64,000 bases of DNA from Schizochytrium sp. TIO01. Its lineage: Eukaryota > Protista > Bigyra: Labyrinthulomycetes. Below, piece by piece: positions 3,627 through 42,974 of the stretch. The number at the start of each line of letters is the position of its first letter. Position 1 is the first letter of the stretch. The notes under the pieces are model-generated. The model was given only the letters and a program-made list of their open reading frames with translations, searched no databases and was not told where the DNA came from. The position numbers and the translations under genes were made by a program. The DNA lies in contig SMSO01000031.1 in NCBI GenBank assembly GCA_004764695.1, positions 4,688,436 to 4,752,435 on the forward strand, in the 5' to 3' direction.

Positions 3627-3635
3627 CTTGTCAGC

Positions 3636-11725: not shown

Positions 11726-12742
11726 ATGCGCCTTGTGGTTTTTGAGAAGATTAATGCACGCCTGTCTCAGGCTGTCAAATACGGAGACCCTCTTGAAGAC
11801 ATTATTTCTGATAATGATCTTGAGTCGTGGGAGACAAGCTGGAATGCTGTGGGTAGCATTTATGCTCATCTTTACAAGGATCACATCAAAGCAACTACTC
11901 CAATGGTACGGCGTAAGTTACACCAACTTACACGAAGATATTTTAAAATGGCTGGAAACATGCCACCTCGGGATGATGTGATAATCCGGCTCGCACAGGA
12001 GGTAAATTATTCACCATTCTTGCTGGCCCGCCTCATCGTCGGGCAAAAGTATAAAATTGCAAAGAAGGAGCTCGCACGGACCATGCGAGACCCAGAAAAA
12101 TTAATTTCGGATAAAGTTCTGCGCCAAAATGTTCTAGCGTGCAGAGAAATCGATACTCAGTACTCTCCAATCCATGACAAGTGCCGTGAGGTGTCCGGTG
12201 ATGAGCATGAATATATTTTGAGCCGGAAATTAGGTGCGCTGGAGATTCCTTTTCTCTCGGAAGATGCTTTGAGAGACCTTGGATTTGCCAAGACTGTCGA
12301 TTTTCTGCTTGAAACGCCCATTGCTGTGTATGGTCCAAAGGGCGAGCTACGCGTGATCTTCTGGATCGATTCTAAAGCAATGTTTGGTGATCCCGCTACC
12401 CATAAGGAGAACACTCCTCAGCTGCAGGGTTATGTACACCGTTTTGGCCCAGGGCTTGTAATATATTGGACAGGTTATGTCGAAGAACTCAATGTACATG
12501 ATGATATTTTATTGGCACAAGATTTGCCAACGCGATTCGCGAGTCTTCCTCGCCTGCAAATGCATCCTTCGGTTGCAGTTGCATCTTCTCCGTCAGAGCC
12601 TGTGCCTGCAACTTTACCAGGTCTTCACTCGACTCAGACTTTTAACAAGACCTCTCCTCCTCCTCCTCCTCCTACTACTACCTCTACTACCACTACTATT
12701 GCTACTACTAGCAGCAGTTCTATTACACTCGCTTCAATGTAA
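11726..12742 (+). CDS. CDIN1: CDIN1/C15orf41-like PD-(D/E)XK nuclease-fold protein (TPD domain)
   Basis: Signatures GDEHEYIL, KTVDFLLETP (family TPD), WIDSKAMFG, QLQGYVHRFGPGLVIYW; poly-Pro/Thr tail. Confidence 0.85.
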   Translation: MRLVVFEKINARLSQAVKYGDPLEDIISDNDLESWETSWNAVGSIYAHLYKDHIKATTPMVRRKLHQLTRRYFKMAGNMPPRDDVIIRLAQEVNYSPFLLARLIVGQKYKIAKKELARTMRDPEKLISDKVLRQNVLACREIDTQYSPIHDKCREVSGDEHEYILSRKLGALEIPFLSEDALRDLGFAKTVDFLLETPIAVYGPKGELRVIFWIDSKAMFGDPATHKENTPQLQGYVHRFGPGLVIYWTGYVEELNVHDDILLAQDLPTRFASLPRLQMHPSVAVASSPSEPVPATLPGLHSTQTFNKTSPPPPPPTTTSTTTTIATTSSSSITLASM

Positions 12743-18256: not shown

Positions 18257-21200
18257 ATGGCGAGAACAAGGCGTATTGTACCTCCTGCAAGCCAACAGGA
18301 CCTTCAAATTCATGACTATGGTGATGACCTGGACGACCTTGCCCAAGATGTACTTTGGGAAGCAGTAGGGGACGCTGGGAACGATGATGATGATGGTTCT
18401 GATGATGATGGAAACCCTCGGGCAGTTCACCGACTCGGCCATGGTCGCAACAAGAAGGAAAAGGAAGCCAAACTTATGTCTGCGGCCTTTGACTTTCGAC
18501 GTGGACCTACTCGCTGGCCTGAGGGTGTTGAACTCATTGACGAAAAGAAGGCAGAAGAACTGATTAAGAAAGCCGAGCAGAGTGCTCAAGAGACCAAGAC
18601 CACAACTGGCTCTGCTGTAGCTGATGACCCTTGGGCGGCGGCAGGAATGTACACTTCAATTTCTGGCAATACTGGAGGGTCTGGATTTGGCGGATCTCAC
18701 GAACGCTCTGCTGGTGGGGGATTTGCAAGCATGGGAACCAGCACCTCAACTGGTACAATGCATGGTAGCTCTGGCGTTATGCAAGGTCCAATTGGTCCCA
18801 GTGGCCCTGGTGGATGGGGTTCTCTGGGATTTGGTGCAGAAATGCCTACAGAAGGAAGTGGAGCTGGTGCCCGTGCTACCGCAGCCAAGTCCTCTAGCAG
18901 CACGAAAATTGATGAACGTGCTCTGGACGACCCCTTGTTTAACTTGGCACCACAAAACGCCACGTTTGAGACTCTAAAGGATCACAGTACTGCACTTATC
19001 CTCATGCCTGGTCAACGCTTGAAGCTAGATCTCGAGGAACTCACAAGCTATGGTGCCAGTTCCAAAGCTCGTGCGCGGTCTCGGAAAGAAGTCAAGCGCC
19101 GTGAAGCTCTTCATAAACGCGGCTTGAAGCGCCAGGCAGCAATGGCAAGAGCTGCTGCTTCAAAGGCTGGTGCCGACCTTGCAGCTGTAGAAGCTGCTGT
19201 AGCTAAGGCCGAAGAAGAGGCCGAAAATATGTTTGCTCAACATGAAGGCCTGGAAGACACCTCCGATGAGGAGGGGTTAATGATGGGCGCTGATGATCTC
19301 TTTGATGGAGATGATGATGATGACGGTAGCTTCTATGGTGGTGGTAACCTTGATTCCGATGGCGGATCCATGGTCATGATCGGTGGCAAGTCGCATGGGA
19401 CAGGTGGGGGAGGCGGTGTTCGTTGGACCGATGAGGTTTTTATGGGCACTGGTGGAGACTCTTCGTGGGGTGGCTTTGGAGGCTATGGAGGTTATGGATC
19501 ACTCTTTAAATCCTATGTGAATCAGTACACAATTACGTTGGATGTTAAGTTCGAGTATGACCCTCCTCGTACGGGTGTATCTCTCTTCCAAACTCGTCTT
19601 GTCCATGTGGAGGAGCACCAGCGCACTGGCAAGAAGCGCATCAAGCAATCTGACGGCGAATGTATGATCAACAGTGAAGGTGGAGTTGGTATTTTGGGAT
19701 CCTATGGTGACGTAACAAAAGCCAAAGTGAAGAAGGGTCGCTGGACTCGTATCGTAATTGCTGTGACTTGTGGTAACGAAGAAAGCAAAGGTCAGATTCG
19801 TACATGGGTTGATGCGGTTCCTTGTGCAAGCGTGACCCACGAAGAAATTATGAAAGATGGGCGCTTTGCAATTGACCCAGAGTCCCTCTTTCTCTTTTCA
19901 TCAAAGAATCAAAATATGATGCCAGGTCACGTTGCCATCCGCCATATCCGCGTTGAGACTTGCTTTGCCGACAACAACACGGTTCGGCAGCAGCGCGCAC
20001 GAGATAAACTGATTAGTATGTATGAGGAAGAACGAAAAGATGAAGTTACAGAACAGCGGAAGGGACTTAGCCTTTCAGTTCTTTTTCCTAAGCCGCGTCC
20101 TGTGTGGGTTGCACCTGCACTTACAGGTACATTTGGTGATGCTTTTATTGAAGGCACAACTTTGGAAGCATCAAGCTTATTGAGTTGGTCATACACTGTT
20201 CTCAACTACACTCTTTCTCGTGCCTTGCATGAAATGTCCCCATTCCTTAGTGCACTTTCTGGGGCAGAAAGGGGTTATGTGAGTGATGCTGCCTTCATCT
20301 TTTCACGGAGTGGTGTAATGATGCGCCAGATGATCAGGTTGCTCAAGCACCGAAACAAGACTCAACTCATGGCCTTTTTGCGAAAGCTTCGTACGACTCT
20401 TGCAGACCTTGAGGTTGGTGACACCGTGATGTTGCCTGTGATCGTGGAAAGCAGTGAATTGGTTATTGTGGTCTCACGCACTGCAGATCAACGATTTCGC
20501 TTTGTGGTAATCAACACTGACCCCCTTGGTGGACTAAAGTACCACGCAGTATCCCCGGTCGCTGGTCCACCCAAGCTAAAATATCGCACTTGCATGGTTC
20601 TGAACAACGTTCCCAAAAAGAACGCGCTTGACAATGTGTTCTGGATGGCTGTCTATAACTTGTCTGTTCACACGCACAAGCGCGATATGGACCGCTTCTA
20701 CGACATTTTGTTGCCCTTCCTTACAGGCAAGCCTCTTGAGGCATCGCTCGTCGAGGCAGAAATGGAGGCTGAGCATGGCGACCAGGCAGCCAATGCGGGT
20801 GCCTACCGCTCGCCACAGCGATCGAAAACCGCCTATGTGCGTTGCTTGCTGCAATCTTTACATTTTGTACTACGCGAGAAGGGGCTTGACGAAATGCGCG
20901 CCAAGATGGTTACACTTGCCCTTCGCGCTCAATTTATCAAAATGATTGCCAATGATCTGGAGTTTGTCCATCCTGACGATAATGGAGTGCGGGTCTGTCG
21001 AATGGCCTGCTCCCAGCTGGCGTACTCTACCGTGAAACTGGTAAAACGGCTCTTGACGGATGCTGAAAACCCTGCAAGCTCTCGTGTTGATGACGAAGAG
21101 GGTGAAGTCGAGGACGAAAAGAGCGAAAAGCATCAAGATCCCAAATCCCCAAGTCGACCTTTGGTGAATGAGGATAACCAGGTAAAGGAGAAACGTGATT

Positions 21201-24200
21201 TGCTCAAGCGCCAGCGTCGCGCAGAAGCGTGCAGAAAGCTGATGCTTGAGGAGTGCAAACGCTTGACCTTCTCTGTTTTGGACAAGGTCAAAGCATGCGA
21301 GGATGACTCTGTCGAGCTTCCTGCGCTTCTTGAGCTCAGTGATTCCAAATTTGAATCCCCCAAGCAGACCATGGAAGCTTTGACAAACACAACAAGAGCC
21401 TCGGGAAGTTCGAAGACTGATGGTGCTACCTCTCCAAGCACTGAGACAGCAGCGGCGCATGACAACCCTGAAACAACAAGGCATGCACCCACGCAGTTGC
21501 TTAAGATTAGTGCTGATGATCCTAATGCAATCTGCATCAAGGTGAAACATACTTTGCCCCAAGCTGACCGTCTACCTTTTGAGTTTTGGATCGATCGTAC
21601 GGGTCTCGTGTCCCAAATATTTGCCCTCATTGAAGATAAGACCGGGGTTCCCGCATCAAAGCAGAGACTCATTTTCCTGGGTAAAATGCTGGATTCAAGC
21701 AAAACATTGGAGAGCTATAAACTCACCGAATCTGGCAAGGTAATTCATCTCGCCGTGACCAAGGTCATTGGAAAGGAGTCTGGGGAAGAGGAAGCCAAAG
21801 GCAAGGCAAAGGCGACACGAGGATTGTTAGGTGGTCCAGAAAGCTCAAGTGCTACAACCTCTTCTAATCATGATAGCGAAGATGCAAATGAGCGCGTGCG
21901 GCAGAATGTTCAATTTTGTGATTCTCCTATGTGGACCATCCCCACCAATATTCCGAACCCTGGCCAAGCTTCAGCGCTGAAGAAATACGTTCCAGTAGAC
22001 TTTTTACAACTGCCGGAAAAAATTGTCAATCGCGCCGAGGCAGTGGACACACTTCGGATGACGGACAAACTGTGTACTCTTCTTGATAATGAAAGTCACT
22101 GCGTGAAGAATGATAAATTGTTGATCCTCAACCTTATTCAATATGTGATGACACAGTTGGTACCTCTCCCTGCGCCGCGTGACGTCCCAAAGGAATCGCT
22201 AGATCGTTTGCGCTCAGAGCGTGCATATAGACGTCAAAAGCGCCGCCAGCGTAAGGAAGCCGAGGCAGCGGCTAAACTTGCAGCAAAGCTTGAAGCAGGC
22301 GGTGATAATGCTCTTCAGGAGCTCAAGTTAGAACATGATCAAGAAGATGACGACTCTGATTGGGATGACGCTTCAAACTCGAGCGATTATTCTGAGGAGG
22401 AGTGGGATAGCGACATTGGAGAGTACGTCTCGCGTCGTGATCGTGATCGTAAAAAGTCACAGGAAGACAAAGAAAGTGACAATGCCTCGAAGGCTGGCTC
22501 AGAAAGCTCGGATGACGAAGATGATGATGCAGCTTTCAATGATGAACTTGACCACGCGAACATTGATGCTGAACTTGCACGAAAGTTAGACGTGCCTAAT
22601 TTGAGCGCGGCGAGCCTAGAGCAAGCTAAGCAACTTCTGGATAACTTGCCCAAGGAACGTGCCGATGCGCTAGAAGAGGTTGATACGCAAGCACATGCTA
22701 ATGCTGAGGATCTTACTATGGACTATTTAGACGATGAACGCTTTCAGCCTGGACTCGGTCAACGCGTGCGTGTTCGATTCATGGGCGAATTCGGTATCTG
22801 GTACAATGGAACGGTCTCACGCTTGAATGATGATGGGACTTACTTTGTTGTTTATGACGATGGTGATACGGAGGATAATGTCCAACGTAGTGCAATCCGC
22901 AGTATCTTTGCGCCGAAGGTACACCGCAGTAAGGAGGAGCGTGTACGTCTTACATCTCGTCTTTTCTCACGGCTTGAAACTGCATTGAAGTCCTTGATTG
23001 CAAAGCTCGAGAAGAAGGAGGAAGATGAAGGAAGCCTGAAAAACGGCAATGAATCATCAGTAAAGGACGGCGTTTCGGGCAATTCTAAGGATGTTGCTAC
23101 AACTGGAGCCACTAGTGGGGCTTCAGAGGCCTCCTCAGAGCAACGACCTGACCTAGAAAATGGTCGTCGTGCAGAATCTGCTGCCACCGCCCGCACTTGC
23201 ATCTGGGATCAAGAACCAATTGATTATGCATTGCAGGTAGAGCTTTTGCTCACCTTGCAGCGACTTATGGAACACTTTGCTGCAGCAGCCTTCTCGCTCC
23301 AGCAGTGCAGACCACTAGATGCTGTTTGCGTCATTGTCCCAGGATGTATTGCTGCTATTTCTGATGCCGTGATGCGTCAAGTAGCCTATGATACGCCTTC
23401 TGAGGTATGCACTCACCTTCTCGGTCAAACACGCGAAGGAAGGCAGCTTGGCATTCCTGGCTTTGGACTGAGCGTTTCGACGTTTGCTGATCAAACAGAG
23501 ACCATTGAAGTGCATACACCAGAATTGAATTTGGCCAGAACTGCTGTGTTGGACTACTTCGAGAGTCCAGCTCAACGTCGTCTCTTCAAGATCTTTACCT
23601 GGGAAACGGCGCCAGAGGTCAAACCCAATGTCTCTCTGATCAAGTACCTCCGCAACGTTTGTCGAGAGACAGCAGCTGTCGAGGCAAGTTCAGCACATTT
23701 CTTGCTAACAGATCGTCACCCTAAGAGTTCCCGCTTGCTCAAAAACTATCCGGAACTTGAGGCATTCCGTGATATCGCCTTTTATTGGAAGTACTTCCTA
23801 AATCCAGATATTACGGCATTCCCAAACTACGGTGGACGAGAGGGTCGAGATATCGATCGTTTTGATCGCCTTACCTCACAGCTGAATTGGCGTTGGAACA
23901 GTGACACTCTTTCTTACGAAATTCGATCATTCAATAACCGTCTCATGGTGTGTCGTCCGTTTCCTGATGTAAATCATGCGGGCCAATCTCATGGTAAAAG
24001 TAACCAGCCCCCCAAACATCGTTTTCCTTCAACAGCAACTCCCTCGTTCTACTTGAATGAACCGCCAGTTTTCACTGAAGACGATATCATCTACCGGCCG
24101 AGCTTGCCCGCTTTCGAAGAGACGATTGAACAGCCTAAGGCACCTTCTGCTCTCTCAGAAGAAAAATCTGATCGTAGCAAGGCATCCAGCGGAGAAGGTC

Positions 24201-27200
24201 GCAAAAACAGTGGAAAGGAGCGCGATGGGGGCACTACAGTTGTCAAGACTCAAGTTCTTGGGCAGCATGATTCCGAGCTCTTACTATCTTACCTCACAGT
24301 TCCTTACATTCGTTTACCACTCGTGTTGACGTTTTTCGCCAGCGATGACCGTTTACACAAGCTTCAGAGCGGCCGACTGCGCGAAATTCTCGATTCTGTT
24401 TTGTTTGAGCCAGGTCGCTACCTATCCTTGGGCCTGCGAGGAGTTGAACCTGTCCTTGTGCCCACCCCTTACAAGGAACTTTTGGCAACTCCGTATGGAA
24501 TGTTTATCAACGAGTTATGCTCTAGCCCTGAGACGGTTCTGCGAGCTACAACGACTCTGATCAAGGACGCACTGGCGCTCGATACTGGCTCCGTGTGTGA
24601 CATTGGAGCGGAGGACTTTAACGTAAGCGTTCAGATTATTCTCTTCACGGCGCGTCTGGCAGCACGCCTCGAAAACTACCTGGCATTTGTTATTCGCCGG
24701 GCTCGCTCGGCAAGAGAACCCCGGCATGCCCTTCGTGACACGCCACTCACTCCTGAATGTGTTGCAAAGCTTGAAGAAGGAATGAAACAAGTTCGCGACC
24801 TGTTGCAAGGTGCTCTTAGTGACCTCTTTAGAGACTATCTTCTTAAGTTGGATGACCAAACCAGAAAGGATCCTTTCGACGAGGACTTAATCCGACGGAA
24901 TTCTCACCTCGCCTGTGATTTGCACGCGCACCTCTTGCTCATCTGCCGTAATGCGACGAAAGAGACCATGACCACCCGCGTGGCGCAAACTTTGGTGGGA
25001 AGTTTTATCTATCTAACCACCCGGCACACCTGGAACAAAGCCACCCGTGAAGATGGCCGCTTGCTGATCCCTGAATTCGAGCTTTACGAGGTCCTACAGG
25101 TACAACGACGCACAATCGTTGAATGGTGTCGCCATTTGCGTCAAGGGGAGCTTGATAAGGTGATGCAATATGCCCTTCAAGTTTCCACAAGCACAAGTGG
25201 CAGCCTCGGATCGAATGACGACGTGCTTTCTGCGTCAAATCGCTGGAGTCGGATTTCTGGACTTCGCTCTGTAGGACGCTATGCAGTCTCCTCACAGAGG
25301 ATGAGTGGCGCTAGTACAGAAGATGCTTCCGGAGCTGCGAAATCAACATCTACTCCATCTTCCAGCACTCCACCGCGTACTCCTACCCTGGAAGAAGACG
25401 GTGATGCAGCCACCACAGCAAGTGGAAACAGCGGTACAACAGCACCATCGCCCTCTCGTATCCAAGCTCTGCTCGAGAAATCGATGCAGCTTGAAGTTGA
25501 GGAAATCTCAGACCAAGAGATGTTTGGTGTTGAAATGGATGTCCAAATTGGACAAATGACTTTGCGCAGCCGCCATTTGAGCGCTCTTCGCTCGGAGATC
25601 AGTAATCATCCCGACATGAAGGACCTCTTTGGTAATGGAACCCTGCAAGTATCTTTGCTTGAGCGCGCAGAGCATCGCGACCGCTACCGCCTTGTTGGTC
25701 TACAACATGATCTTGAACACTGGATCACTCCACACAACGCTTGCCCTCCGATCGACGAGCAGTGGGAGCGCCAATATGACCCTGCATCGCTTTTTCCTTC
25801 CGAGGAATGGATCCCCTTCCTTTTTGAGCCAGTACGCAAGTCATTCTTTGATGGACCCCATCCTGAAGCTATGGAATTTTTAATGCCTGAGTGGGCTCTT
25901 CCAGAGGACGCTGAAGTAGCAGTTTTGCTTGGATTACACCAGCAGCTTGGCGGCCCATTCAAGCTTGTCTATCTTTTCCGTCGCTTACGTTGTGTCCATG
26001 TGTATGAGTGCTTATCGCATGGTCGTCACTGGTTTTGGTCTTTGCATTTGGCCACTGATGCCCGTTTCTGCCTTCGTGAGCTGCAGCCAAGTGTCGACGC
26101 ACGTATGGTTCCCCGCCCACGTTGGTGGAAGCATGGTGCTGGAGATGCTTACCCTAAAGGCGTCGGAGGTTCTTTGATGAATGTGGTTCAGGGAGGCCAC
26201 TTTGTAAGCTCTCCAGATCTTTCCATTGTTGTAGTCCGAGAAGCCGGACATCCAGAAAACTTTAGTGGAGGTAAGGAAACATACATCCCAGCACGCCTTC
26301 TATACGGAGCTATCCCGCAAACTTTACTGGATTCATACCGATTCTGGCACGACGAGACTTGGTCTGAGGACATCCGAGTTCCATCCAATTTATTTCAAGG
26401 CGGAAATGATCTCAACGAAATCGGGTTGCCAAAGGATTCCAAGGTGCCTTCAACAGAAACTGAGGATCCTGACGCAGTATTGAAGCAAGAAAAACCGTGG
26501 CTAGGCAAGCAAGCTCGGGCTACCCAGCAACAGTCTCGCGATGGTTATCGTGCTGTTCGCTACCTCCGTGGATATCCAGTCGATGAAGATGGTGAACATG
26601 TCATTGTAGTTGAGCTCAAGAGTGTGGGTTCTTGGCTTGAGGTGCTGCGTCGCAAACCAGGCGAAGCTGGCGCTGCGAGTGATTCTGGCCTGGAGAGTAT
26701 GGGTGGTCTCCCGGGTACGGTATCTCGCATCACTCGATATGACAAGGCTGCTATGAAGAAACGCTTCGCTGATAAACAAAATTTAGCTTTGTGTCTGGAG
26801 TCACTGCAGCTGATCAAGGATCCGGCCAATGATCCATTCATGAATCAGGCTAGGGAACGTCGAGAAAAGGCCTTGCGTAAGGCAGCTGATCGCAAGAAAA
26901 AATGGGCAAAACGAACAAAATCCAAGACCAAGAATGGAGCTACTGCGGCAGCTCTTGCTGGCTTGAGCAACGCAGATGGAAAACCTTCTGCTTCCAATCA
27001 TAGCGACAAGCTTTTGGCTCCAGAGCATGACGCTAATCCTTCAGGTCATGTGTATGAAGTGAATGTGGGAGACCAAGTAAAGTTTATGGTGAAGCGTGGT
27101 CGCTACATTGATGTTGTTGTTCTTTCCAAGAACACAGATAGTACGTTTGATGTGAAGGGCATGCGTGGTGCAAGTGCTGGTATGGTGCTTGAGCGTGTTG

Positions 27201-36200: not shown

Positions 36201-39200
36201 ATTCTAGTTTTCAGTGCTCACAGTAGTGTAGACGAAGAAGATCGTATGACACTTTGGGAGATGGGTGTTACTGTTGTTGATTCAACCGAAGATCTCGTAA
36301 AGATCGTAGAGGAAATTCAGGACTACGACCGTGCTAACAAGTCGCATAGTCAACACACTGGTGAAGAGGATGATCTTGGCGAAGAGGTCGAAGAAAAGGA
36401 AGCAAGTATATCTGAGACGGGCGAGGCTACATCCAGCTTTTCTGAGGATGACGACCCTGATGTAATCTTCTTGCGGGATACTTTAGGCCGTGATGCAGAG
36501 GGTCGTAGGCTTGACTGCGACAGCAGCAAAAAGGATATGAAGGAGAAAGACAACTTAGAACTTTCTGATATCACACCTCCTGCTCCTTTGGTTCGCGTTC
36601 CTAGTTCAGGTTCTAAGACGTTGCAGATGCTGCGCCGTCGTCTGGAAGCCTTTGAGCGAGCTAAAAGTGAGATTACAGATGATGACGAGGAGGTGCGGCA
36701 ACAATTTCGTGAGCGAATTTCGGCTACTCGTGCAAAACTCGAATACGAGCTTGATGCTATTCGTACTGAGACCAAGGTTGCTTTGCAACGCATCCCAGAA
36801 CATCTATTAGATGATGCGCTTGCGACTGCTGGAAAAGGCAAGCTAGACTCCGAAGAAGACTTCATCCACCCACGTTCACTTGGTGTACGCCGAGCGCGGG
36901 CGCTTGCTTGGTTGGATCGTGTTGCACCAGCTTCAACATCCGGTAAACGTATCATTAAATCTGCAAAGGCTCCTGTTGAAGGTTCGCACGAGGTTGCCGC
37001 CTCGGCTGATGAGAAGGAAGCTGCTCTTGAGGCCTATTATACCTTCAAGACCGAGCTGAAATTCTTTGATCGTCAAAGTTTGGCAGCTAAGATTGTTGCC
37101 AGGGTATCTCCACAGCACAAAAAGCTTCTAAATCTTACTCGTGACTGGTTGCGAACTTTTCTGCCTCATTGTTTGGCGAAGGTCAACCGGGTCTCATTTG
37201 GACTTCTTAATGAAGAAGACTGTAAGCGTGCTCTGGAAGAGGATCCATTGATGCCTCGATCTCGTCTAAAGCTTGCGGTCCCTTTTGTCGGTAAGGATGT
37301 ACCAAGTTCAAGTTCGGAGTTTGCCCATCCTGATATCACAATTGGTTTAACAATTTTGGGCTACCGCTACAGTGGCTTACGCGAGTCCGACTTTGAGACA
37401 GTAGTAGATGAAATTACAACTGAATTCGCTAGGGAAATTGGTCCCGCGCGGGAACGCAAGTCTAGTCAGCGATACGAACAGTGGGTGAATGAGTCAGGTG
37501 GTACCTTGCGTGGAGTTCGCGACATCACAACTTCGACCCCGGCCAATGGAGGTGGGTCAGCCCTTGGCTCAGCATCCCCAGCTTCTAGCTTTCCGACGAG
37601 ACGCATTCCGGATTCCCAAGGAACTTCGGCATCTGCAGTTGTTGCTGCAAGCCGCGATCGGATGGACGCAGAGGAGCGTGAGGTAGTGCAACTCAAATAT
37701 CTGCAGAAAAGCAATCGTGAGCAAATGCAAAAACTCTATAAGCTGTGGAAGTTTGAGCCACTTGTGATTCACCATTACCTCAGTCATACTGTTTTACCTG
37801 CTCATATGCGGTCTCAAAAGGTGAAAATCTCTGCTTCTGGCCAAGCCGTGGGTGGAGAAATGCTCTTTGGGCGCCGTGTTGGGTTTAGTGGTACTCCAAG
37901 CGACTTGTTACCAAAGGAACTTGGACGTTGTGACTACGAGACAGGTGATGATGGAAAGATGTTAAGCACTGTCTTGGACCCTGACACTACTGGCTATGAG
38001 TACATAAAGTCGAACTGGAATGTCGAGGATTTGCTGAAGGGCATTGCTCAGGCAGAATCTCCGCGTTACCATGCTTTGATCGATACAGGCGCCTTGATCA
38101 CTGGTTACACAAACAAGCAGGTAGCCCAGACGTTACTCGATCTCGGTCTGCCTTGGTGTGACGGTGTAGTGTTTCTTGACGATGATGACAAGCAGCAGGT
38201 TCTTGTACGTGCTACAGGCCGTGTGATCAGCGCAGACCAATGTGGTGTTCCTTTGGAGCGGCGTTTTGCATTCTACGATCAGATTCATACCACCGGAATG
38301 GATATCAAACACGTTGTCAATGCACGTGCTGTAATTACACTTGGTAAGGATATGGTCTTCCGCGACTATGTCCAGGGCGCCTTCCGTATGCGTGGTATTG
38401 GAAAGGGCCAAACCATTTGTGCGTACATCATTCCCGAAGTGCAAGAGCTTATGAAACGCGAGCTTCTTGCAGCAGGAGTTTCTGAAGGATCATATTCTCA
38501 TACTGGTGAAGACAAAACCTTAGTAGATATTGTTGCTTGGCTCGTGATCAACTCGATGCGCTCTGAGCAAGTGCAGTGGAGCATGCTTTGCATGCAGAAC
38601 ATTTCCAATGTTTATCGGAAAAACGCACTTAAACAGCTTATGCGGGATGAGGCAGTAAAACTCGACACAGCTCTGGACTCACGACCTGCGCTTGAGGTGT
38701 TCAGGGAAACTGTAGACTTTGCGCTCGAGGGTAATGTTCCAGATCCCTTGCCTTTCTCTAAGCGTCTCGAAAATATGATCGAGCACCATCGTGAGTTCAT
38801 CATTAACGACGTCGAAGAGAAGATTGGCCAAGATGTTCTCCATGAGGTGCAAAAGTATTCTGGATCATCTGAGGAAACTTCCGCACAAAAACTTGAATCA
38901 GAGCAGGAGCGCGAACAGGAGCAGGAACAAGAGAAGGAGGTGCGCGCAAAACGCGAGCAGCAAATTGAGGTGGAGAAGTTTGTCGACCGCGAGTACTCTC
39001 GTGCTGATGAAATTCCCCGCTCATGGCCTTTCCGTTTACTCTCTCGTGATCCTGCACGAGTAAAAAGCTCAAAGAGGTTGACCGGTAAGGAGCGTGCAGC
39101 AGCTTCTGCCGCTGCTGTGGACGAAGATTATCCCTTTTTCCCACTCTCAGATTTCAAGCTTCGTCATCAAGAGCCACTTGAGTATCCTGACTTTATGTAC

Positions 39201-42200
39201 TTCTCACGGAATTACTTTAACCCAAGCTGGAATGGCTTACGGCGAGTGAAGAATGTTATCATGGTGCTCGAGTGGGCTCCGTCTGTCGCAAAGGTCCGAA
39301 ATCTGGGACCAGAGGAGTGTGCAGAGATGCATCCTATCCAAGGGGACGCAAAACGCTCATTGAAGAAAGCATATGAGTTACTTTCGGTGCGCACAGGTGA
39401 GCTTGGTCCAGAAGATGTTATGCAAGCTGTTTGGGCAGCCACTGATGTCCGTCTCAGCGAAGTGGATGTTGCAGACATCATTGCCGAATATGGCACAGAA
39501 CGCAACAGCCTAACGTTAGATGGCTTGCAACGCTTGCTTACGCGTGGTCGTCTGCGCTCTGTCGAGCACGGCCGGAATTATGTTGTTGTGTCATTAGCCG
39601 AGGCTGAGACTATTCGTCGTATCTTGCATTTACGTGCAGCTCAAGGGGAAGCTCTGATTTCGGGTAGCGACACCGAGATTGCTTTGCGGTATTCCCCAAT
39701 GTCTACAATGGGCTCTTCCGAAAGCTCGAAGAAGAAAGCTGTTCAAGATGACACACATGTTCTTGAGGATAGTAGTCTTGATGGGCTCGACGAAGCTCTT
39801 ACCTTGAGTGGAGCTTCAAAATCAACGCAGCTTCGGGACGCTCGGAACAGTTCACGCGCAAAGCAATCGCTTGCTGAGTACGGCATGGTCCTTGATGCTT
39901 CTAAGCACTGGCGTGCCGCAGATGGCGTGTCTTTCGACACCTTGGCTCCGAGTTTTCAGGCAGCGATTGCTCATACGTGCGCTCGGTTTTTGGATTGCAA
40001 CATGCATTTCCGATCTATGGATCTAAATGTGTTGCTGTGTGCTTTGCAGAGAAACTCCACGCACTCTCGGGAGCTGTTCTTCTTGCAGACCATGGGTTGC
40101 AAGCGACGAATGGACCGTAAATGGAACGATACACCACTGGCCAAGGTCTTCTCCGTTCCTGATGAATGGTGTGCCTTCAAGCAACGTGCCCAGGCAGTGT
40201 TTGTTCGTGAGGCAATTCGCAATAAGCGTTTGACTGAGTGGGAAGCATTTACTGCTTTTGATTCGGATGACAACGGTTTGCTTAGCCCAGCCGAATTCTA
40301 TGGTGCATTGCGCTGGCTCGGTGTTCCAAACTTGACTCCGAATGATGTGATCGACATGTTTGAGGTTGCTGACCGGAACCACGATGGTCTCATTGACTAT
40401 AAGGAGTACATCGTCTTCCTTCAAGGCGAAGAGGAAAGTGAAGCAGCTGACGAAGATGAGGAAGATCACGAGCAGGCATCACAAATCGATGGTTCTATGC
40501 CTCATGCCAAGCCATTGGTAGAACCTTATGGTGCCGATCTTCTGCGCGAGGTAATTGTACAACGTGCTCGTGATGAATTGAAACGACAAGAGGAGGAGCG
40601 AATTCGCCGTGAGGCTTACAATCGTGCGTTTGATATTAAGATATTTGAAGAAGAATTAGAGGCAAGCAAGTCTCGTGAAGGTGGTGCAAACCCGTTGCTG
40701 AGCACGCTTGACTCAGGGACGCAAATCTGCGAGTATTCTTTTGTTCAAAATGAGCGTCCTCTTCGTATGACCTCAACAGGACATAGCAAATTTGTCCAGG
40801 AACATACTATGTATACAACTGAGAAGGCAACGCAAGCTGCAAACAAGGTTCGTTGCCGTATGGGTCACGAATTGACTACCACATGGTACTCATGGCGGAA
40901 ATGCTGTGGATGCTCTAATCGCAATAGTGTTCGCTATGACTGCAACCATTGGCAATGTTCGTACTACCTTTGCCAACGTTGCTATTCTAGTATCTTGGAA
41001 ACCAAGAAACGCGAGCGAGAGGACTTATCAAAGCAACTATCCTTCTTTAGCTGCGCAACCGGTGGCAGTTTACTTGTTCAAGTTCCGACAGCTATTACTG
41101 AAGCTACAAAAGTTGAAATGTCGTCTTCTGAGGAGTCAAAGGCCGAGGTGTATAAGGAATTGACTACAGGACACGAGTCGGCATCAGTAAATGATGATAA
41201 CAGTGGCGAAAATGAAAAACCCGGGGCAGACGCAGTGACAACACAGGCAGCTTCCGTCTTCACATTCATGATGGATGTTCGGATCGATCGGTTGCCTGGC
41301 AAAGATGGAAGACACGCTCTCGCGAAGTTTTCTGCTAACCCTCAGAACAGGCACAACCGCAAGCGCAACAAGGCGAATGTCTACATCGATGAAACTGGAC
41401 GTGTGACCAACGGTAGCACGGCAATGCCGAAGCTTGAGGCATCTGAGGAAGCCAACTCGAAGCCAGTTGCTAATGCTGACATGTCCGTTTCTAGCCACCC
41501 TACTCTTCAGAGCGAGGGGCAACCTCTTCCTGTTGAAGATACCTCTAGCAAAGAGGTTATGGATGATGCGAAAATTTCTTTGATTGCGGATTCTAGCGAG
41601 GACAGTGTAGCCGCTGAGACCGGTACAACAAAGCCTGACCTAGAAAAGAGTGATGAGGTTGCCAGCAGTCAAAACGATGCTGGGGAATCTGAAGATCATG
41701 CATCAGAAGATGGAGAGAAGACTAAGGTTTTGCACGAGGCTTGTAAGGAGCAAGAGGAGGAAGATAGCAATGAACTTGAGGAAGAAGTCCATAACGAAAA
41801 GAAGATTAAACGTACATCTTCTAAGAAGGACAAGGCGAAGAAGAAGAAGAAGAAGAGATCGTCCAAGAAGAGCTCGGAAGACGTTGATTCTGACAATGAT
41901 GACTCTAATGATGACTCCAATGATGACGACTCGGACGACGAAGAAGAAAATGAGTCAAACAAGGCTGAGGCAACCCCTGCGAAGCCATGGCATGGTGTTG
42001 TTAAGGGTGGTACCTGGCACGTCGTTACTGTAGTAGTTGATGGAACTAAATCTACAATGACTACTTATGTAGATGGCGTGAGCTCTTGTGAATTCTCAGG
42101 GTTGAGTAAAGAGGATTTGGAGCTTCAGCATCAAGTAACCTTGTTTGGAGGGGCCCAGCAACGTGACATGCGAGGCGGCTCTGTTCGTCGTTTAATTATT

Positions 42201-42974
42201 TATAACCGCGCATTGGATGAGGAAGAGGTACAAACTCGTACTAACGAGTTGAAGGAGAAGTCGCAAAAGCGTATTCTTTGGTATCGCTCTCGCCCTGACT
42301 CAATGGACGATAAGAGCATCATGAAGTCAATTCGTGGAATTGATGTCGAAGTCAAGGTGGTTGACTCAGAGGAGGAGGCTATGGACTTTCTCAACTCTGG
42401 TAAGAGTGTATCTAGCATCGTCAGTCAGCTTTGGGCTCCTCAGTATGAAGATGATGAAGGAGTGCTTCGTTTGCCCGGGTTCAACAAAGACGGCGAAGGC
42501 AAACCGCCCGGCATCCTCTTTGCAGAAAAGGTACGCACTATCAACAAGACTGTGCCAATTGTGATGGATCTTTCTAGCCCACCCGAAAAAGCTAAGGAGT
42601 ACATTGTTGGTGAAATGGTGAAGGCTCGCTATGGAGGAGGTAGTGTATGGTATCCAGGACGAATCTCTAAGGTGCATGAGACAAAGACAAAGCGTGGAAA
42701 GGTAATTCGTTCTTATGATATTAGCTACTCTGATGGTGATTCTGAAAGCAAGGTCAAATCCAAGCTAATCAAGGTTGGACGCAAGAAGAGTAAAAGTGCA
42801 GCTCGTACGGACAACTTATATCAGTACAAGGACGAATACAACAAGGATGTGCGTCGCAAGGCTATTCGTCTGTACGCCCACAAGGAGCAAGCAGAGGAAT
42901 TGATATGCAGTACCATTTCTTTGCGCACCCGCCCTGATACATCTGCTCAACAAGATAAAACACCTAAAAGGTGA
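18257..42974 (+). CDS. Giant (~8,240 aa) multidomain DUF3638/DUF3645 helicase-like P-loop ATPase; one gene split by a +1 frameshift at 35189-35192
   Basis: ORFs 18233-35200 and 35241-42974 join on skipping one base (GEK-F-DLDASQQGERWSLP). DUF3638-type motifs FDPRYLLFEF, MIMGAGKTT (Walker A, 34592-34606), LLDEVDLIL (Walker B, ~35126). DUF3645-type LAVPFVGKDVPSSSSEFAHPD (~37260-37370). Later motifs GFSGTP, ALIDTGALITG, YDQIHTTGMD, QGAFRMR, EQEREQEQEQE. Confidence 0.85.
21530..21757 (+). other. Integral ubiquitin-like domain in giant protein
   Basis: IKVKHTL...VSQIFALIEDKTGVPASKQRLIFLGKMLDSSKTLESYKL...VIHLAV; no terminal di-Gly. Confidence 0.85.
22748..22903 (+). other. Tudor-like domain 1 (further copies ~27059-27220, weaker, and ~42600-42775)
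   Basis: GQRVRVRF...WYNGTVSRLNDDGTYFVVYDDGDTE; C-terminal copy GEMVKARYGGGSVWYPGRISKV...YDISYSDGDSE. Confidence 0.75.
29190..29455 (+). other. Thioredoxin-like domain 1, non-canonical active site (WKPTC)
   Basis: VVACFHVTWKPTC...AFVSIRAD...IKTFPTFVLMRGGEEI follows the Trx fold pattern including the cis-Pro loop (FPT). Confidence 0.7.
29750..31330 (+). other. SPRY-like domain interrupted by WWE (~29858-30115) and SAM (~30830-31000) domains
   Basis: SPRY segments GSVGFVPFSGVHEWTI, AVGLC, LCANGKLYHHG, GSQITCILN...LRFQIDG...VYPVVSL; WWE WEWSLEYDGRNWSKFPADQNKEIE; SAM KILADFGLEKFAEKLFDAGYTSFESL...KIRKAF. Confidence 0.65.
32080..32310 (+). other. WWE domain 2
   Basis: VWMYQLDNRWLRYEPEVCEKLERARRSG...MRVRR matches the W-W-E spacing and terminal R-x-RR. 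Confidence 0.7.
32516..32612 (+). repeat. Coding 9-nt tandem repeat (TTTGGYGGC)n encoding (FGG)7-FG-DWGGWGGWG
   Basis: Directly visible in sequence and translation. Confidence 0.95.
33130..33460 (+). other. Thioredoxin domain 2 with intact CxxC (WCAPC, 33224-33238)
   Basis: LVAIQFHAAWCAPCKAVSP...VRFLRVDIDDC...VERLPTMKFFR. Confidence 0.9.
40255..40420 (+). other. EF-hand pair
   Basis: Canonical 12-residue loops DSDDNGLLSPAE and DRNHDGLIDYKE. Confidence 0.9.
40854..40985 (+). other. Cys/His zinc finger (DC1/ZZ-like); a second Cys/His cluster at ~35997-36080
   Basis: CRMGHEL...CCGC...YDCNHWQCSYYLCQRC; CGPDCENHHNTICLRCNKDWGGHAGHNC. Confidence 0.65.

What the first reader, a model, noticed from the sequence alone, without database searches (positions are those of the whole stretch)
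18257..42974. Giant intronless DUF3638/DUF3645 ATPase with a suite of ubiquitin, ADP-ribose, redox and calcium-type sensor domains
Seen, in order: LamG-like, protease-like, Ubl, Tudor, Tudor-like, Trx, SPRY[WWE, SAM], WWE, FGG repeat, Trx(CxxC), Walker A GAGKT / Walker B DEVD, Zn cluster, DUF3645, helicase-C-like motifs (QGAFRMR), EF-hand pair, Zn finger, LamG-like, receiver-like, Tudor; about 8,240 aa with no apparent intron. Knowledge: DUF3638/DUF3645 are domains of unknown function; WWE domains bind ADP-ribose chains and co-occur with ubiquitin/PARP systems; SPRY and SAM are interaction or polymerisation modules common in immunity proteins. Inference: a signal-integrating ATP-driven machine, conceptually like the giant immune ATPases RNF213 and ZNFX1, possibly for antiviral or stress defence. 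The sensor modules sit in acidic loops of a conserved scaffold. I know of no functional description of this architecture.
Basis: partly seen in the sequence, partly recalled or inferred. Interest (0 to 1): 0.88.

Follow-up and report, generated by a model that had tools for sequence, protein, structure and literature searches.

The report
Giant SecA-like DUF3638/DUF3645 ATPase gene
This is a real, intron-free gene for an 8,238-residue protein of a widespread but unstudied protist family. It joins a SecA-like ATP motor to ubiquitin-, ADP-ribose-, redox- and calcium-type modules, and the one break in its reading frame is absent from four other sequencing data sets.

Summary
The gene is real: window 18257-42974 (+), no intron. 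The assembly splits it into 5,647 and 2,593 codons through one extra T in TTT at 35189-35191. Contigs of 4 of 4 independent runs lack that T, giving one 8,238-aa ORF. SNPs among those runs are 20 synonymous to 5 non-synonymous, on both sides of the break.

Most domain calls hold: two LamG-like domains, Ubl, Tudor, two Trx, split SPRY, one WWE, FGG repeat, DUF3638/DUF3645, EF-hand pair and two Cys/His clusters. A nested WWE was not found. The receiver-like and second Tudor-like calls were not tested.

New here:
- The motor's closest solved fold is SecA (Z 17.1). About 915 aa are inserted between motifs II and III.
- The "protease-like" block has the fold of the Legionella AnkH/AnkD/LegA15 C-terminal domain (Z 16.5/14.6). 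His and Asp are conserved, but no Cys is.

Full-length orthologues (5,000-8,000 aa) occur in stramenopiles and Rhizaria. The genome holds three intact paralogues, which this scan had already noted on other pieces. No paper describes a function.

The immune-sensor analogy is unproven. An ATP-driven remodeller linked to ubiquitin and PAR is my best guess. Verdict: a new member of a known, uncharacterised family.

The parts
18257..42974 (+). Whole gene: 8,238 codons plus stop once one extra T at 35189-35191 is discounted; no intron
   Evidence: ORFs; junction; reads; colinear with the 7,997-aa orthologue P0121
35189..35191 (+). TTT run holding one surplus T. This is the only frame break, and it lies inside DUF3638, 18 codons after Walker B
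   Evidence: All four runs laid (X1, X7, X9, X17) leave out 1 letter at 35189. Without it the text reads GEKFDLD, as in homologues
19514..19966 (+). LamG/pentraxin/CBM40-like beta-sandwich no. 1 (aa ~420-570)
   Evidence: AF2 model, pLDDT 80; PTX3 Z 11.5, NanA CBM40 Z 11.4; Foldseek E 1e-4
20078..21136 (+). Family-wide N-terminal domain with the fold of the Legionella AnkH/AnkD/LegA15 C-terminal ('cysteine protease-like'/atypical GTPase) domain (aa ~608-960). H763, W796 and Y815 are near-invariant; D792 54/60; C863 only 27/60
   Evidence: 6mca Z 16.5 over 265 aa; 7ew8 Z 14.6 over 250 aa; 7xql/7kj6 Foldseek E 6e-4; conservation
21563..21793 (+). Integral ubiquitin-like domain (aa 1103-1179) with no C-terminal LRGG. 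Present only in the nearest orthologues
   Evidence: PF00240 E 9e-12; PDB ubiquitin/NEDD8; coverage map; sequence
22757..22900 (+). Tudor/Agenet-like domain (aa 1501-1548), below the Pfam threshold
   Evidence: PF21743 24.6 bits against 27.2
23177..26356 (+). Family-wide conserved scaffold (aa 1641-2700), probably helical; fold not determined
   Evidence: BLAST blocks shared with paralogues; coverage map. The ESM Atlas gave only weak helical TPR/MUN-like leads at 0.77
27599..28636 (+). Second family-wide scaffold block (aa 3115-3460)
   Evidence: 36% identity to all three paralogues
29087..29443 (+). Thioredoxin-fold domain no. 1 without CxxC (WKPTC; aa 3611-3729)
   Evidence: PDB thioredoxin h E 1e-5; PF00085 18.8 bits; internal match to Trx no. 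2
30236..31342 (+). SPRY-like domain (aa ~3994-4362), split by an acidic linker and a SAM-like insert (aa 4193-4234)
   Evidence: SPSB4 SPRY E 0.018; SAM_1 E 0.07; both SPRY halves conserved in 15 orthologues, insert not
32084..32257 (+). WWE domain (aa 4610-4667)
   Evidence: PF02825 E 3e-8
32516..32578 (+). FGG x7 repeat (aa 4754-4774)
   Evidence: Direct reading
33173..33397 (+). Thioredoxin no. 2 with WCAPC (C4991, C4994)
   Evidence: PF00085 E 2e-20; sequence
34463..39617 (+). ATPase core (aa ~5403-7120). Motif I GAGKT at 34592-34606; motif II DEVD at 35126-35137; a ~915-aa insert between motifs II and III; motif III GFSGTPS at 37881-37901; motif VI QGAFRMR at 38373-38393; then a long helix
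   Evidence: PF12340 E 7e-28 and PF12359 E 2e-14; motifs. Model of the paralogue's core (pLDDT 80.5) is closest to SecA: 2fsf Z 17.1 over 426 aa, 4uaq Z 15.2; the 17 best Foldseek hits are SecA/SecA2
35961..36086 (+). Cys/His cluster in the motor insert (C5902, C5914, C5918, H5922, C5926, C5929, H5936, H5939, C5941, H5943). Specific to this orthologous group
   Evidence: Sequence; ligand positions conserved in 15 orthologues; region absent from paralogues
37254..37352 (+). DUF3645 motif (AVPFVGKDVPSxSSEFAHPD), inside the motif II-III insert
   Evidence: PF12359 E 2e-14; near-invariant in alignments A4 and A5
40239..40424 (+). EF-hand pair (aa 7328-7389), both loops canonical
   Evidence: PF13499 and PF00036; calmodulin E 4e-11; sequence
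40854..40982 (+). Second Cys/His cluster, ZZ/RING-like by pattern (C7533, H7537, C7549, C7552, C7562, C7567, C7572, C7575)
   Evidence: Sequence; conserved in orthologues; no Pfam hit
41943..42254 (+). LamG-like domain no. 2 (aa 7896-7999)
   Evidence: PF13385 E 3e-8
42606..42752 (+). C-terminal Tudor (aa 8117-8165)
   Evidence: PF18359 E 0.006 here, E 2.4e-5 in orthologue P0001; alignment

Best explanation
Shown. Window 18257-42974 is one functional, intron-free gene for an ~8,238-aa cytosolic protein of the eukaryotic DUF3638/DUF3645 family. It belongs to a giant subfamily that is conserved across stramenopiles and Rhizaria and carries Trx, SPRY, WWE, two Zn modules and EF-hands. The single frame break in this assembly is most likely a homopolymer consensus error.

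Fold-level result. The engine is an SF2-type pair of RecA-like domains whose closest solved architecture is SecA. It has motif I GAGKT, motif II DEVD, a very large helical insert between motifs II and III, motif III GFSGTPS, motif VI QGAFRMR and a long helix after the second RecA domain. The insert sits where SecA carries its preprotein-binding domain; here it holds DUF3645 and a Zn module. A second conserved domain near the N-terminus has the fold of the Legionella LegA15/AnkH/AnkD C-terminal domain. It keeps a His/Asp pair and a basic R-x-P-Q-R...R motif, but no conserved Cys. I therefore read it as a nucleotide- or phosphate-binding domain or a pseudo-protease, not as a proven deubiquitinase.

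Inferred mechanism. ATP hydrolysis by the SecA-like motor clamps and pulls or remodels a polymeric client, most likely a polypeptide or protein complex. Reader modules choose and gate the client: Ubl, WWE (poly-ADP-ribose/ubiquitin systems), SPRY, Tudor, LamG, a redox-active Trx and Ca2+-binding EF-hands. They are built into loops of a large helical scaffold.
For: Gene integrity:
- 4 of 4 runs lack the extra T.
- 20 synonymous against 5 non-synonymous SNPs across both frames, where 23% synonymous is expected by chance.
- Homologues read through the site.

Family and orthologues:
- Pfam PF12340 and PF12359 score above their cut-offs.
- The orthologues are P0121 (7,997 aa, 64% identity, full coverage), P0122, Paulinella (6,815 and 7,115 aa), Epipyxis and Chrysophaeum.
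- Three intact paralogues share a colinear scaffold.

Motor:
- AF2 model with pLDDT 80.5.
- SecA Z 17.1 over 426 aa and SecA2 Z 15.2 over 447 aa, against 11-13.7 over ~330-350 aa for ordinary helicases.
- The 17 best Foldseek hits are SecA or SecA2.
- Motif positions.

N-terminal domain:
- AnkH Z 16.5 and AnkD Z 14.6 stand clearly above all other hits for that part of the model.
- Residue conservation.
- LegA15 biochemistry (PMC9757750).

Ubiquitin and proteostasis leaning, from domains fused to this core in other family members: UBA, RanBP2-type Zn fingers, MIB_HERC2, AZUL, RING, DnaJ, Ubl and many Trx/peroxiredoxin domains (precomputed Pfam lists).
Against: - No sequence-level link to SecA or any helicase family. 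There were no Pfam SecA or Helicase_C hits, a profile search of PDB sequences found nothing for the core, and NCBIfam found nothing.
- SecA's lead over DinG and SNF2-type motors is only 2-4 Z units. DinG/XPD also carry an insert between motifs II and III.
- The motor model is of the paralogue on contig C3 (35-44% identical), because the frame break prevents handing in this gene's own core as one chain.
- The client is unknown. Tudor, SPRY and Zn modules would equally suit a nucleic-acid or chromatin client.
- Transcription in this organism was not shown. The 'RNA?' label of runs X9 and X17 is a guess by the tool.
- The strain that was assembled could really carry the extra T.
Confidence: 0.55

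Rival explanations
1. It is a nucleic-acid-dependent SF2 helicase or translocase. The motor moves on RNA or DNA, and the Tudor, SPRY, Zn and WWE modules tie it to chromatin, RNP granules or PAR-marked damage sites.
For: After SecA, the next structural hits are all DNA/RNA motors at Z 12-13.7: DinG, CHD4, FANCM, RecG and Hel308. There is a weak ResIII match at E 0.03. DinG/XPD also have a domain inserted between motifs II and III. Tudor and WWE domains often work in nucleic-acid-linked pathways (established knowledge).
Against: SecA and SecA2 rank first in both searches and align about 100 more residues. No recognisable nucleic-acid-binding domain (RRM, KH, dsRBD, OB) is present in this protein. 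The domains fused to the core across the family are dominated by ubiquitin, redox and chaperone types.
Confidence: 0.2
2. This is the first reader's model: an immune or stress sensor ATPase analogous to RNF213 or ZNFX1. The integrated decoy or sensor domains detect viral or stress signals and switch the motor on.
For: The module inserts differ between the four paralogues and partly between orthologues. WWE, SPRY and SAM-like modules are common in immunity proteins (established knowledge). Giant viruses of protists (Hokovirus, Harvfovirus, Fadolivirus and others) encode several DUF3638 proteins whose predicted N-terminal domains match this one, which hints at a host-virus interface.
Against: The protein has one-to-one orthologues of 45-64% identity over more than 6,000 aa across distant SAR (stramenopile-alveolate-rhizarian) lineages. 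Trx, SPRY, WWE, Zn and EF modules are fixed in them. There are only four family members in the genome. Purifying selection is seen among strains. No effector domain was found and PADLOC gave no match. The motor class differs from both RNF213 and ZNFX1.
Confidence: 0.12
3. It is a deubiquitinase, as the automatic UniRef name 'ubiquitinyl hydrolase 1' implies. The N-terminal protease-like domain would be the catalytic centre and the ATPase would feed it substrates.
For: UniRef names many family members this way. The domain's solved structural relatives were first described as cysteine protease-like, with a putative H268-N290-C361 triad (Chung et al. 2021, as cited in PMC9757750). Here H763 and D792 are conserved with similar spacing, Q854 follows 62 residues later, and this protein does have C863.
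Against: No Cys is conserved in the domain. C863 is Cys in only 27 of 60 homologues, and Ala, Ser, Thr or Asn elsewhere. There is no peptidase Pfam match. LegA15 itself was later shown to be a GTPase, with H268A having little effect (PMC9757750). No experimental paper on the family was found.
Confidence: 0.06
4. In the sequenced strain the gene is a very young pseudogene: the extra T is real.
For: The assembly shows the frameshift. I could not lay the reads of the assembly's own sample with certainty.
Against: Four runs from four studies, 99.7-99.8% identical to the window, all lack the T. The error sits in a homopolymer. Other frame breaks by one extra base have been noted elsewhere in this assembly (unchecked notes). 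Both halves are otherwise intact over 16.9 and 7.8 kb.
Confidence: 0.08

Closest known systems
Pfam DUF3638 (PF12340) / DUF3645 (PF12359) giant proteins of protists and fungi, often auto-named 'ubiquitinyl hydrolase 1' or 'nucleoredoxin' (e.g. Chrysophaeum taylorii CTAYLR_001253, Paulinella transcripts, Thecamonas AMSG_00592)
   Same: Both Pfam signatures score above threshold. The scaffold is colinear, and the Walker A/B, DUF3645 and motif VI blocks are shared. This gene's subfamily also shares the Trx, SPRY, WWE, Zn-module and EF-hand set.
   Different: At 8,238 aa it is the longest member seen in these searches. With its nearest relatives alone it has an extra N-terminal extension, a Ubl, a Tudor and a C-terminal LamG/Tudor block. 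It also has a SAM-like insert not matched elsewhere. The family has no described function.
SecA / SecA2 protein-translocation ATPase (PDB 2fsf, 4uaq, 1tf5)
   Same: It is the best structural match of the motor: two RecA-like domains, a large domain inserted between motifs II and III, and a long helix after the second RecA domain. Both carry a DEVD Walker B; for SecA that is from memory, not tested here.
   Different: No detectable sequence homology. The insert here is helical and 300-915 aa long, not a PPXD (SecA's preprotein cross-linking domain). The protein is cytosolic and eukaryotic, has no partner channel, and is embedded in a protein of 4,000-8,000 aa.
C-terminal domain of Legionella effectors AnkH (6mca), AnkD (7ew8) and LegA15 (7kj6, 7xql)
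   Same: Same fold at Z 16.5 and 14.6 over 250-265 residues. A His followed ~25 residues later by Asp/Asn, and ~62-66 residues later by a Gln-containing conserved motif.
   Different: No sequence-level similarity. The Cys that is essential in LegA15 (C361) has no conserved counterpart. Here the domain is one module of a giant eukaryotic protein, preceded by a LamG-like domain instead of ankyrin repeats. A residue-by-residue superposition could not be made with these tools.
RNF213 and ZNFX1
   Same: Very large cytosolic NTPases with ubiquitin-system links and Zn modules.
   Different: RNF213 has a dynein-like AAA+ ring plus RING/RZ E3 modules, and ZNFX1 has a Upf1-like SF1 helicase plus NFX1 zinc fingers (established knowledge). 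Neither architecture is present here. The motor is SF2/SecA-like and no E3 domain was found.
DinG/XPD-type SF2 helicases
   Same: Second-best structural class (Z 13.7). They also carry a domain inserted between motifs II and III (the insert position is established knowledge).
   Different: No Fe-S cluster domain lies before motif II, fewer residues align than for SecA, and there is no sequence match.

Membership tests
DUF3638/DUF3645 family (Pfam PF12340 + PF12359) | PF12340 match above the gathering score | tested here: met
   97.8 bits against a cut-off of 31, covering profile positions 8-154 up to the frame break. The rest continues in the next frame.
DUF3638/DUF3645 family (Pfam PF12340 + PF12359) | PF12359 match above the gathering score, downstream of PF12340 | tested here: met
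   53.1 bits against a cut-off of 25, full profile 1-33, at aa 6333-6365.
DUF3638/DUF3645 family (Pfam PF12340 + PF12359) | Colinear homology with other members outside the two Pfam segments | tested here: met
   More than 238 homologues. The blocks are shared with three paralogues and with distant protist proteins.
SecA family | Sequence membership (Pfam SecA_DEAD, SecA_PP_bind, SecA_SW; NCBIfam secA) | tested here: not met
   No such hit at E <= 1 in Pfam or NCBIfam, and a profile search of PDB sequences found no SecA.
SecA family | DEAD-motor fold with a domain inserted between motifs II and III and a long scaffold helix after NBD2 (the second nucleotide-binding domain) | tested here: met
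   Fold level only, and on the paralogue's core: 2fsf Z 17.1 over 426 aa spanning model residues 33-919; helix 796-839 follows the second RecA domain.
SecA family | Polypeptide translocation through SecYEG | not testable with these tools
   Needs biochemistry. There is no signal of membrane association in the sequence.
SF2 helicase-like NTPases | Motifs I, II, III and VI in order on two RecA-like domains | tested here: met
   GAGKT 5446, DEVD 5624, GFSGTPS 6542, QGAFRMR 6706; fold. Pfam Helicase_C was not matched, and ResIII only at E 0.03.
Deubiquitinase ('ubiquitinyl hydrolase 1', EC 3.4.19.12) | Conserved catalytic Cys with His (and Asp/Asn) in a recognised DUB fold | tested here: not met
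   His763 is conserved in 60/60 and Asp792 in 54/60, but no conserved Cys exists (the best candidate, C863, is 27/60). No peptidase family matched.
LegA15/AnkH/AnkD C-terminal domain (atypical GTPase / Cys-protease-like) | Shared fold | tested here: met
   Z 16.5 and 14.6, clearly above other hits for that part of the model.
LegA15/AnkH/AnkD C-terminal domain (atypical GTPase / Cys-protease-like) | GTP-binding and hydrolysis residues (R291, Q356, C361, K/R367, R408 of LegA15) | tested here: inconclusive
   Conserved R851, Q854, R855 and R/K862 lie at comparable spacing, but no residue-level superposition was possible and the Cys is not conserved.
RNF213 / ZNFX1-type immune ATPases | AAA+ dynein-like ring with RING/RZ E3, or Upf1-like SF1 helicase with NFX1 zinc fingers | tested here: not met
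   The motor is SF2/SecA-like. No RING, RZ or NFX1 domains were found.

The most novel reading that the evidence does not exclude
The DUF3638/DUF3645 proteins are an ancient, eukaryote-wide and wholly unstudied class of cytosolic SecA-like polypeptide-handling motors. They are coupled to a LegA15-type nucleotide-binding (or pseudo-protease) domain and to ubiquitin, PAR, redox and Ca2+ readers. They would be a new kind of protein-remodelling or quality-control machine, lost in animals and plants and copied by giant viruses. The Legionella AnkH/AnkD/LegA15 effector domain would be a bacterial acquisition of its N-terminal module from protist hosts.
Probability: 0.2. Interest if true: 0.85.

Novelty: new member of a known kind. 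Interest (0 to 1): 0.55.

Why it matters
The family is present in most protist supergroups, in fungi and in giant viruses. Its members are among the largest proteins of their genomes. Yet as late as 2025 it is described only as 'domain of unknown function' (PMC12615304).

This locus gives two fold-level, testable handles on it:
- The motor looks like SecA, the only well-known SF2-type engine that moves polypeptides rather than nucleic acids.
- The conserved N-terminal domain looks like a Legionella effector domain whose activity (protease or GTPase) is itself disputed.

If the inferred mechanism holds, it would define a new ATP-driven branch of ubiquitin/PAR-linked proteostasis or signalling. 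It would also explain where a Legionella effector fold came from.

On the practical side:
- The database label 'ubiquitinyl hydrolase 1' for this family rests on no conserved catalytic Cys.
- The frame break in this assembly should not be read as programmed frameshifting or as a pseudogene.

Tried and rejected

Sequence-level links that came back empty:
- N-terminal domain against PDB sequences.
- Core profile against PDB sequences: only low-complexity and calmodulin noise.
- PADLOC and NCBIfam.
- N-domain alignment against bacterial and archaeal genomes: 157 pattern hits, none confirmed.
- Core alignment against viral contigs: none confirmed.

Searches that gave little:
- The exhaustive HMMER search with the N-terminal domain returned 567 hits, but the 150 listed are all fragments or members of the same family. 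It could not show relatives outside the family.
- Whole-piece PDB searches were swamped by ubiquitin and calmodulin.
- The ESM Atlas gave only sub-0.9 leads: ShET2 and YopJ-type families for the N-domain, and helical TPR/MUN-like families for the scaffold. I treat these as leads only.

Technical limits:
- The two halves were always searched apart. Only in my scripts were they joined, with X at the break, for numbering and BLAST.
- The neighbouring genes (kinesin, TPD-motif protein, Sel1-repeat protein, YchF, Ariadne RBR) suggest no functional cluster.

Full report
**1. What is in the sequence.**
On the + strand the window holds two very long ORFs, 18233-35200 and 35241-42974. G+C is about 0.49-0.51, against 0.39-0.44 in the flanks. 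The first ATG is at 18257. The two ORFs are in different frames and overlap as open frames between 35169 and 35200.

At the junction the DNA reads GGA GAA AAG TTT C GAC CTT GAC. The first frame gives ...SELNFPMGEKFRP-stop and the next frame gives ...DLDASQQGERWSLPTHLLDAIFF. Fifty homologues read SELNFP[IML]GEKFDLD[GA]S..GERWSLP without interruption, so exactly one base is surplus.

I laid the contigs of four public runs from four studies on 32500-38000. The tool labels two of them DNA and two 'RNA?' by guess. All four cover the place at 99.7-99.8% identity, and all four leave out one letter at 35189, the TTT run. There are no other insertions, deletions or joints. The sequence then reads AAG TTC GAC = K F D, and the gene is one ORF of 5,645 + 2,593 = 8,238 codons.

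The 25 SNPs among those runs are 20 synonymous and 5 non-synonymous, spread over both frames. About 23% synonymous would be expected by chance. The gene is therefore under purifying selection on both sides of the break.

The break is most simply a homopolymer error of this assembly; a strain-private mutation cannot be fully excluded. The two halves were searched apart in every tool. Only in my own scripts were they joined, with X at the break, for numbering.

**2. Domain calls.**
Numbering below is on the 8,238-aa product.

| Support | Domain and position | Evidence |
|---|---|---|
| Pfam above threshold | Ubl 1103-1168 | |
| Pfam above threshold | WWE 4610-4667 | |
| Pfam above threshold | Thioredoxin 4973-5047, with WCAPC | |
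| Pfam above threshold | DUF3638 from 5403 | |
| Pfam above threshold | DUF3645 6333-6365 | |
| Pfam above threshold | EF-hand pair 7328-7389, both loops canonical | |
| Pfam above threshold | Laminin_G_3 7896-7999 | |
| Weaker but consistent | Tudor 1501-1548, just under threshold | |
| Weaker but consistent | First Trx fold 3611-3729 without CxxC; PDB thioredoxins at E 1e-5; matches Trx no. 2 internally | |
| Weaker but consistent | SPRY in two halves (~3994-4080 and ~4300-4362), split by an acidic linker and a SAM-like stretch | |
| Weaker but consistent | C-terminal Tudor 8117-8165, E 2.4e-5 in an orthologue | |
| Read directly | FGG x7 (4754-4774); GAGKT (5446); DEVD (5624); GFSGTPS (6542); QGAFRMR (6706) | |
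| Read directly | Cys/His clusters 5902-5943 and 7533-7575, ligand positions conserved in 15 orthologues | |

I found only one WWE, not two. The 'receiver-like' stretch (~8005-8105, conserved only in the nearest relatives) and the second 'Tudor-like' call were not tested.

**3. Scaffold and inserts.**
The genome holds three further DUF3638 genes with intact ORFs of 4,027, 4,831 and 5,144 aa, on contigs C3, C13 and C6. This scan had already noted them on other pieces.

BLAST shows a colinear scaffold shared with all three. The shared blocks are aa ~610-940, 1236-1333, 1641-2700, 3115-3460, 5123-5760, 6270-7120 and ~7240-7410. The accessory modules lie between these blocks.

A search with aa 600-2700 found a true orthologue of 7,997 aa (64% identity, full coverage). 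It also found a series of 5,000-7,400-aa proteins at 44-53% identity. Their names include Paulinella chromatophora and P. micropora, the chrysophyte Epipyxis, Chrysophaeum taylorii and Aureococcus. The Paulinella chromatophora member is a complete 6,815-aa ORF from a transcriptome.

The coverage map separates two classes of module:
- Shared by this whole orthologous group: Trx no. 1, SPRY, WWE, Trx no. 2, the Zn module inside the motor, the EF-hands and the second Zn cluster.
- Confined to the nearest relatives or to this gene: the first 400 aa, the Ubl, the first Tudor, the acidic/SAM-like insert and the C-terminal LamG/Tudor block.

The 'variable insert' picture is therefore true between paralogues and at the edges. 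Most of the module set, however, is an old and fixed architecture.

More distant members number over 238 at E <= 1e-3. They come from kinetoplastids, diplonemids, euglenids, alveolates, haptophytes, Amoebozoa, apusomonads and chlorarachniophytes. They carry the same core fused to UBA, RanBP2-type Zn fingers, MIB_HERC2, AZUL, RING, DnaJ, ankyrin, peroxiredoxin/nucleoredoxin, Vps62, SH3, WW and PDZ domains.

Other agents' notes call this genome a thraustochytrid.

**4. The N-terminal conserved domain.**
I predicted aa 381-960 with 20 homologues as the alignment. Mean pLDDT was 80.2.

Residues ~420-570 form a pentraxin/LamG/CBM40-type beta-sandwich (PTX3 Z 11.5, NanA CBM40 Z 11.4).

Residues ~608-960 are the block shared by the whole family. 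They match the C-terminal domain of the Legionella effectors AnkH (6mca, Z 16.5, 265 aligned residues) and AnkD (7ew8, Z 14.6, 250 aligned residues). Foldseek also finds LegA15 (7xql and 7kj6, E 6e-4). These stand far above any other hit for that part of the model.

That domain was first described as 'cysteine protease-like', with a putative H268-N290-C361 triad. It was then shown to bind and hydrolyse GTP through R291, Q356, C361, K367 and R408, while H268A had little effect (PMC9757750).

Conservation in 60 family members:

| Residue | Conserved in |
|---|---|
| H763 | 60/60 |
| W796 | 59/60 |
| Y815 | 59/60 |
| D792 | 54/60 |
| R851 | 51/60 |
| R855 | 47/60 |
| Q854 | 41/60 |
| R/K862 | 53/60 |
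| C863 (the only nearby Cys) | 27/60 |

A conserved Cys nucleophile is missing, however, so the UniRef name 'ubiquitinyl hydrolase 1' carried by many members is not backed by a conserved active site.

No sequence-level link to the Legionella proteins, or to any bacterial genome, was found. An exhaustive HMMER search listed only members and fragments of the same family among its best 150 hits.

The same model also matches predicted N-terminal parts of DUF3638 proteins of giant viruses: Harvfovirus, Hyperionvirus, Fadolivirus, Yasminevirus and four proteins of Hokovirus.

**5. The motor.**
The frame break prevents handing in this gene's core as one chain. I therefore modelled the intact core of the paralogue on C3 (1,161 aa, 35-44% identical to this gene's two core pieces), with 38 rows including both halves of this gene. 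Mean pLDDT was 80.5 and pTM 0.72.

Foldseek's 17 best PDB hits are SecA or SecA2, from E 1.5e-7. The independent all-against-representatives search put E. coli SecA first (Z 17.1, 426 aligned residues, model 33-919) and M. tuberculosis SecA2 second (Z 15.2, 447 aligned). DinG, CHD4, FANCM, RecG, SNF2-type and DEAD-box motors follow at Z 11-13.7, with ~330-350 residues aligned.

The model shows:
- a first RecA-like domain with Walker A and DEVD;
- a ~300-residue helical insert before the strand bearing GFSGTPS (motif III);
- a second RecA-like domain ending in QGxFRMR (motif VI);
- a 44-residue helix directly after it.

In this gene the motif II-III insert is ~915 aa. It contains the near-invariant DUF3645 motif (AVPFVGKDVPSxSSEFAHPD) and the orthologue-specific Zn module. 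A large insert between motifs II and III and a long scaffold helix after the second domain are the hallmarks of SecA. DinG/XPD share only the first of these.

Profile and family searches give no sequence-level match to SecA or to helicase families. Membership in the SecA family is thus not met; the resemblance is architectural.

**6. How it most likely works.**
- Shown: an intact, selected, giant gene; family membership; the module inventory; the conserved scaffold.
- Fold-level results: the SecA-like SF2 motor and the LegA15/AnkH-like domain.
- Inferred: the motor uses ATP to clamp and move or remodel a polymer held by the insert domain. The readers select and gate the client. These are the Ubl, the WWE for poly-ADP-ribose-linked ubiquitin signalling, the SPRY, Tudor and LamG domains, a redox-active thioredoxin and Ca2+-binding EF-hands.

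I lean to a protein client, meaning ubiquitin/PAR-linked remodelling or quality control. SecA is the nearest engine, and the family's fusions are dominated by ubiquitin-binding, E3, DnaJ and redox domains. I give this about 0.35-0.4 on its own, and 0.55 for the whole statement including the solid parts.

Rivals:
- A nucleic-acid motor (0.2).
The giant-virus copies and paralogue-specific module sets speak for it. Deep one-to-one orthology, only four copies in the genome, no effector domain and no PADLOC match speak against it.
- A true deubiquitinase (0.06).
- A young pseudogene in this strain (0.08).

**7. Novelty.**
Full-text searches found no functional study of DUF3638 or DUF3645. A 2025 paper states that the domain's mechanism is undefined (PMC12615304). 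A 2017 paper only lists it as the domain of an expanded microsporidian gene family (PMC5423893).

The locus is a new and unusually large member of a known but uncharacterised family, not a new kind of element. I did not find the LegA15/AnkH-like identity of the N-terminal domain, or the lack of a conserved Cys, described anywhere in the papers searched.

**8. Limits.**
- Transcription in this organism is not demonstrated. The 'RNA?' labels are guesses, though long contigs of 24.7 and 25.4 kb in those runs span the laid stretch.
- The organism's name is not verified.
- The central scaffold (aa 1641-3460) has no fold assignment.
- The motor model is of a paralogue.
- No residue-level superposition on SecA or LegA15 was possible with these tools.

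Noticed in passing
window 35186-35195: The frame break is a TT-to-TTT homopolymer difference between this assembly and four other data sets. Earlier notes on this genome report other genes broken by a single extra base, some at UUU-C, and propose programmed +1 frameshifting. At this site the simpler reading is a systematic consensus error of the assembly.
   Followed up: yes
G000 C3:1133998-1146081 (+), C13 about 3061490-3075985 (-), C6 about 2528208-2543642 (-); loci L005-L016: Three intact paralogous DUF3638/DUF3645 genes of 4,027, 4,831 and 5,144 aa. They share the scaffold but carry different inserts. The C6 copy has a ~520-aa insert inside the LegA15/AnkH-like domain.
   Followed up: partly
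BFVD hits to model m08159ab79a50: Giant viruses of protists encode DUF3638 proteins whose predicted N-terminal domains match this one: Hokovirus (four proteins), Harvfovirus, Hyperionvirus, Fadolivirus and Yasminevirus. The direction of transfer and the role in infection are unknown.
   Followed up: no
homologue lists: UniRef auto-names many family members 'ubiquitinyl hydrolase 1', and others are named 'nucleoredoxin' or 'calmodulin' after a single accessory domain. The only protease-like domain lacks a conserved Cys, so these names look unreliable. P0036 is filed as an Anaerolineaceae MAG (metagenome-assembled genome) protein but is 53% identical to this eukaryotic core, so it is probably a mis-binned eukaryotic contig.
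   Followed up: partly
window 52516-53742 (+): An Ariadne-type RBR E3 ligase gene (IBR, IBR and Ariadne domains) lies about 9.5 kb downstream. Other neighbours are a kinesin (6560-9103), a TPD-motif protein (11726-12742), a Sel1-repeat protein (45057-47663, minus strand) and YchF (48543-49673). No sign of a functional cluster.
   Followed up: partly
window 32500-38000, run X17: The X17 contig that spans the laid stretch is 24,718 nt long, the same length as the finding. By its offsets it would cover about 18283-43000, which is almost exactly the ORF. If X17 is truly RNA, this would be a near full-length intron-free transcript contig, but the tool marks the RNA label as a guess.
   Followed up: no
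window 30600-31900 (aa ~4100-4600): Extremely acidic and Ser/Glu-rich low-complexity linkers (up to 42% D+E per 50 aa, with SE/ESE repeats) surround the SAM-like insert and precede the WWE. Orthologues cover this stretch only partly.
   Followed up: partly
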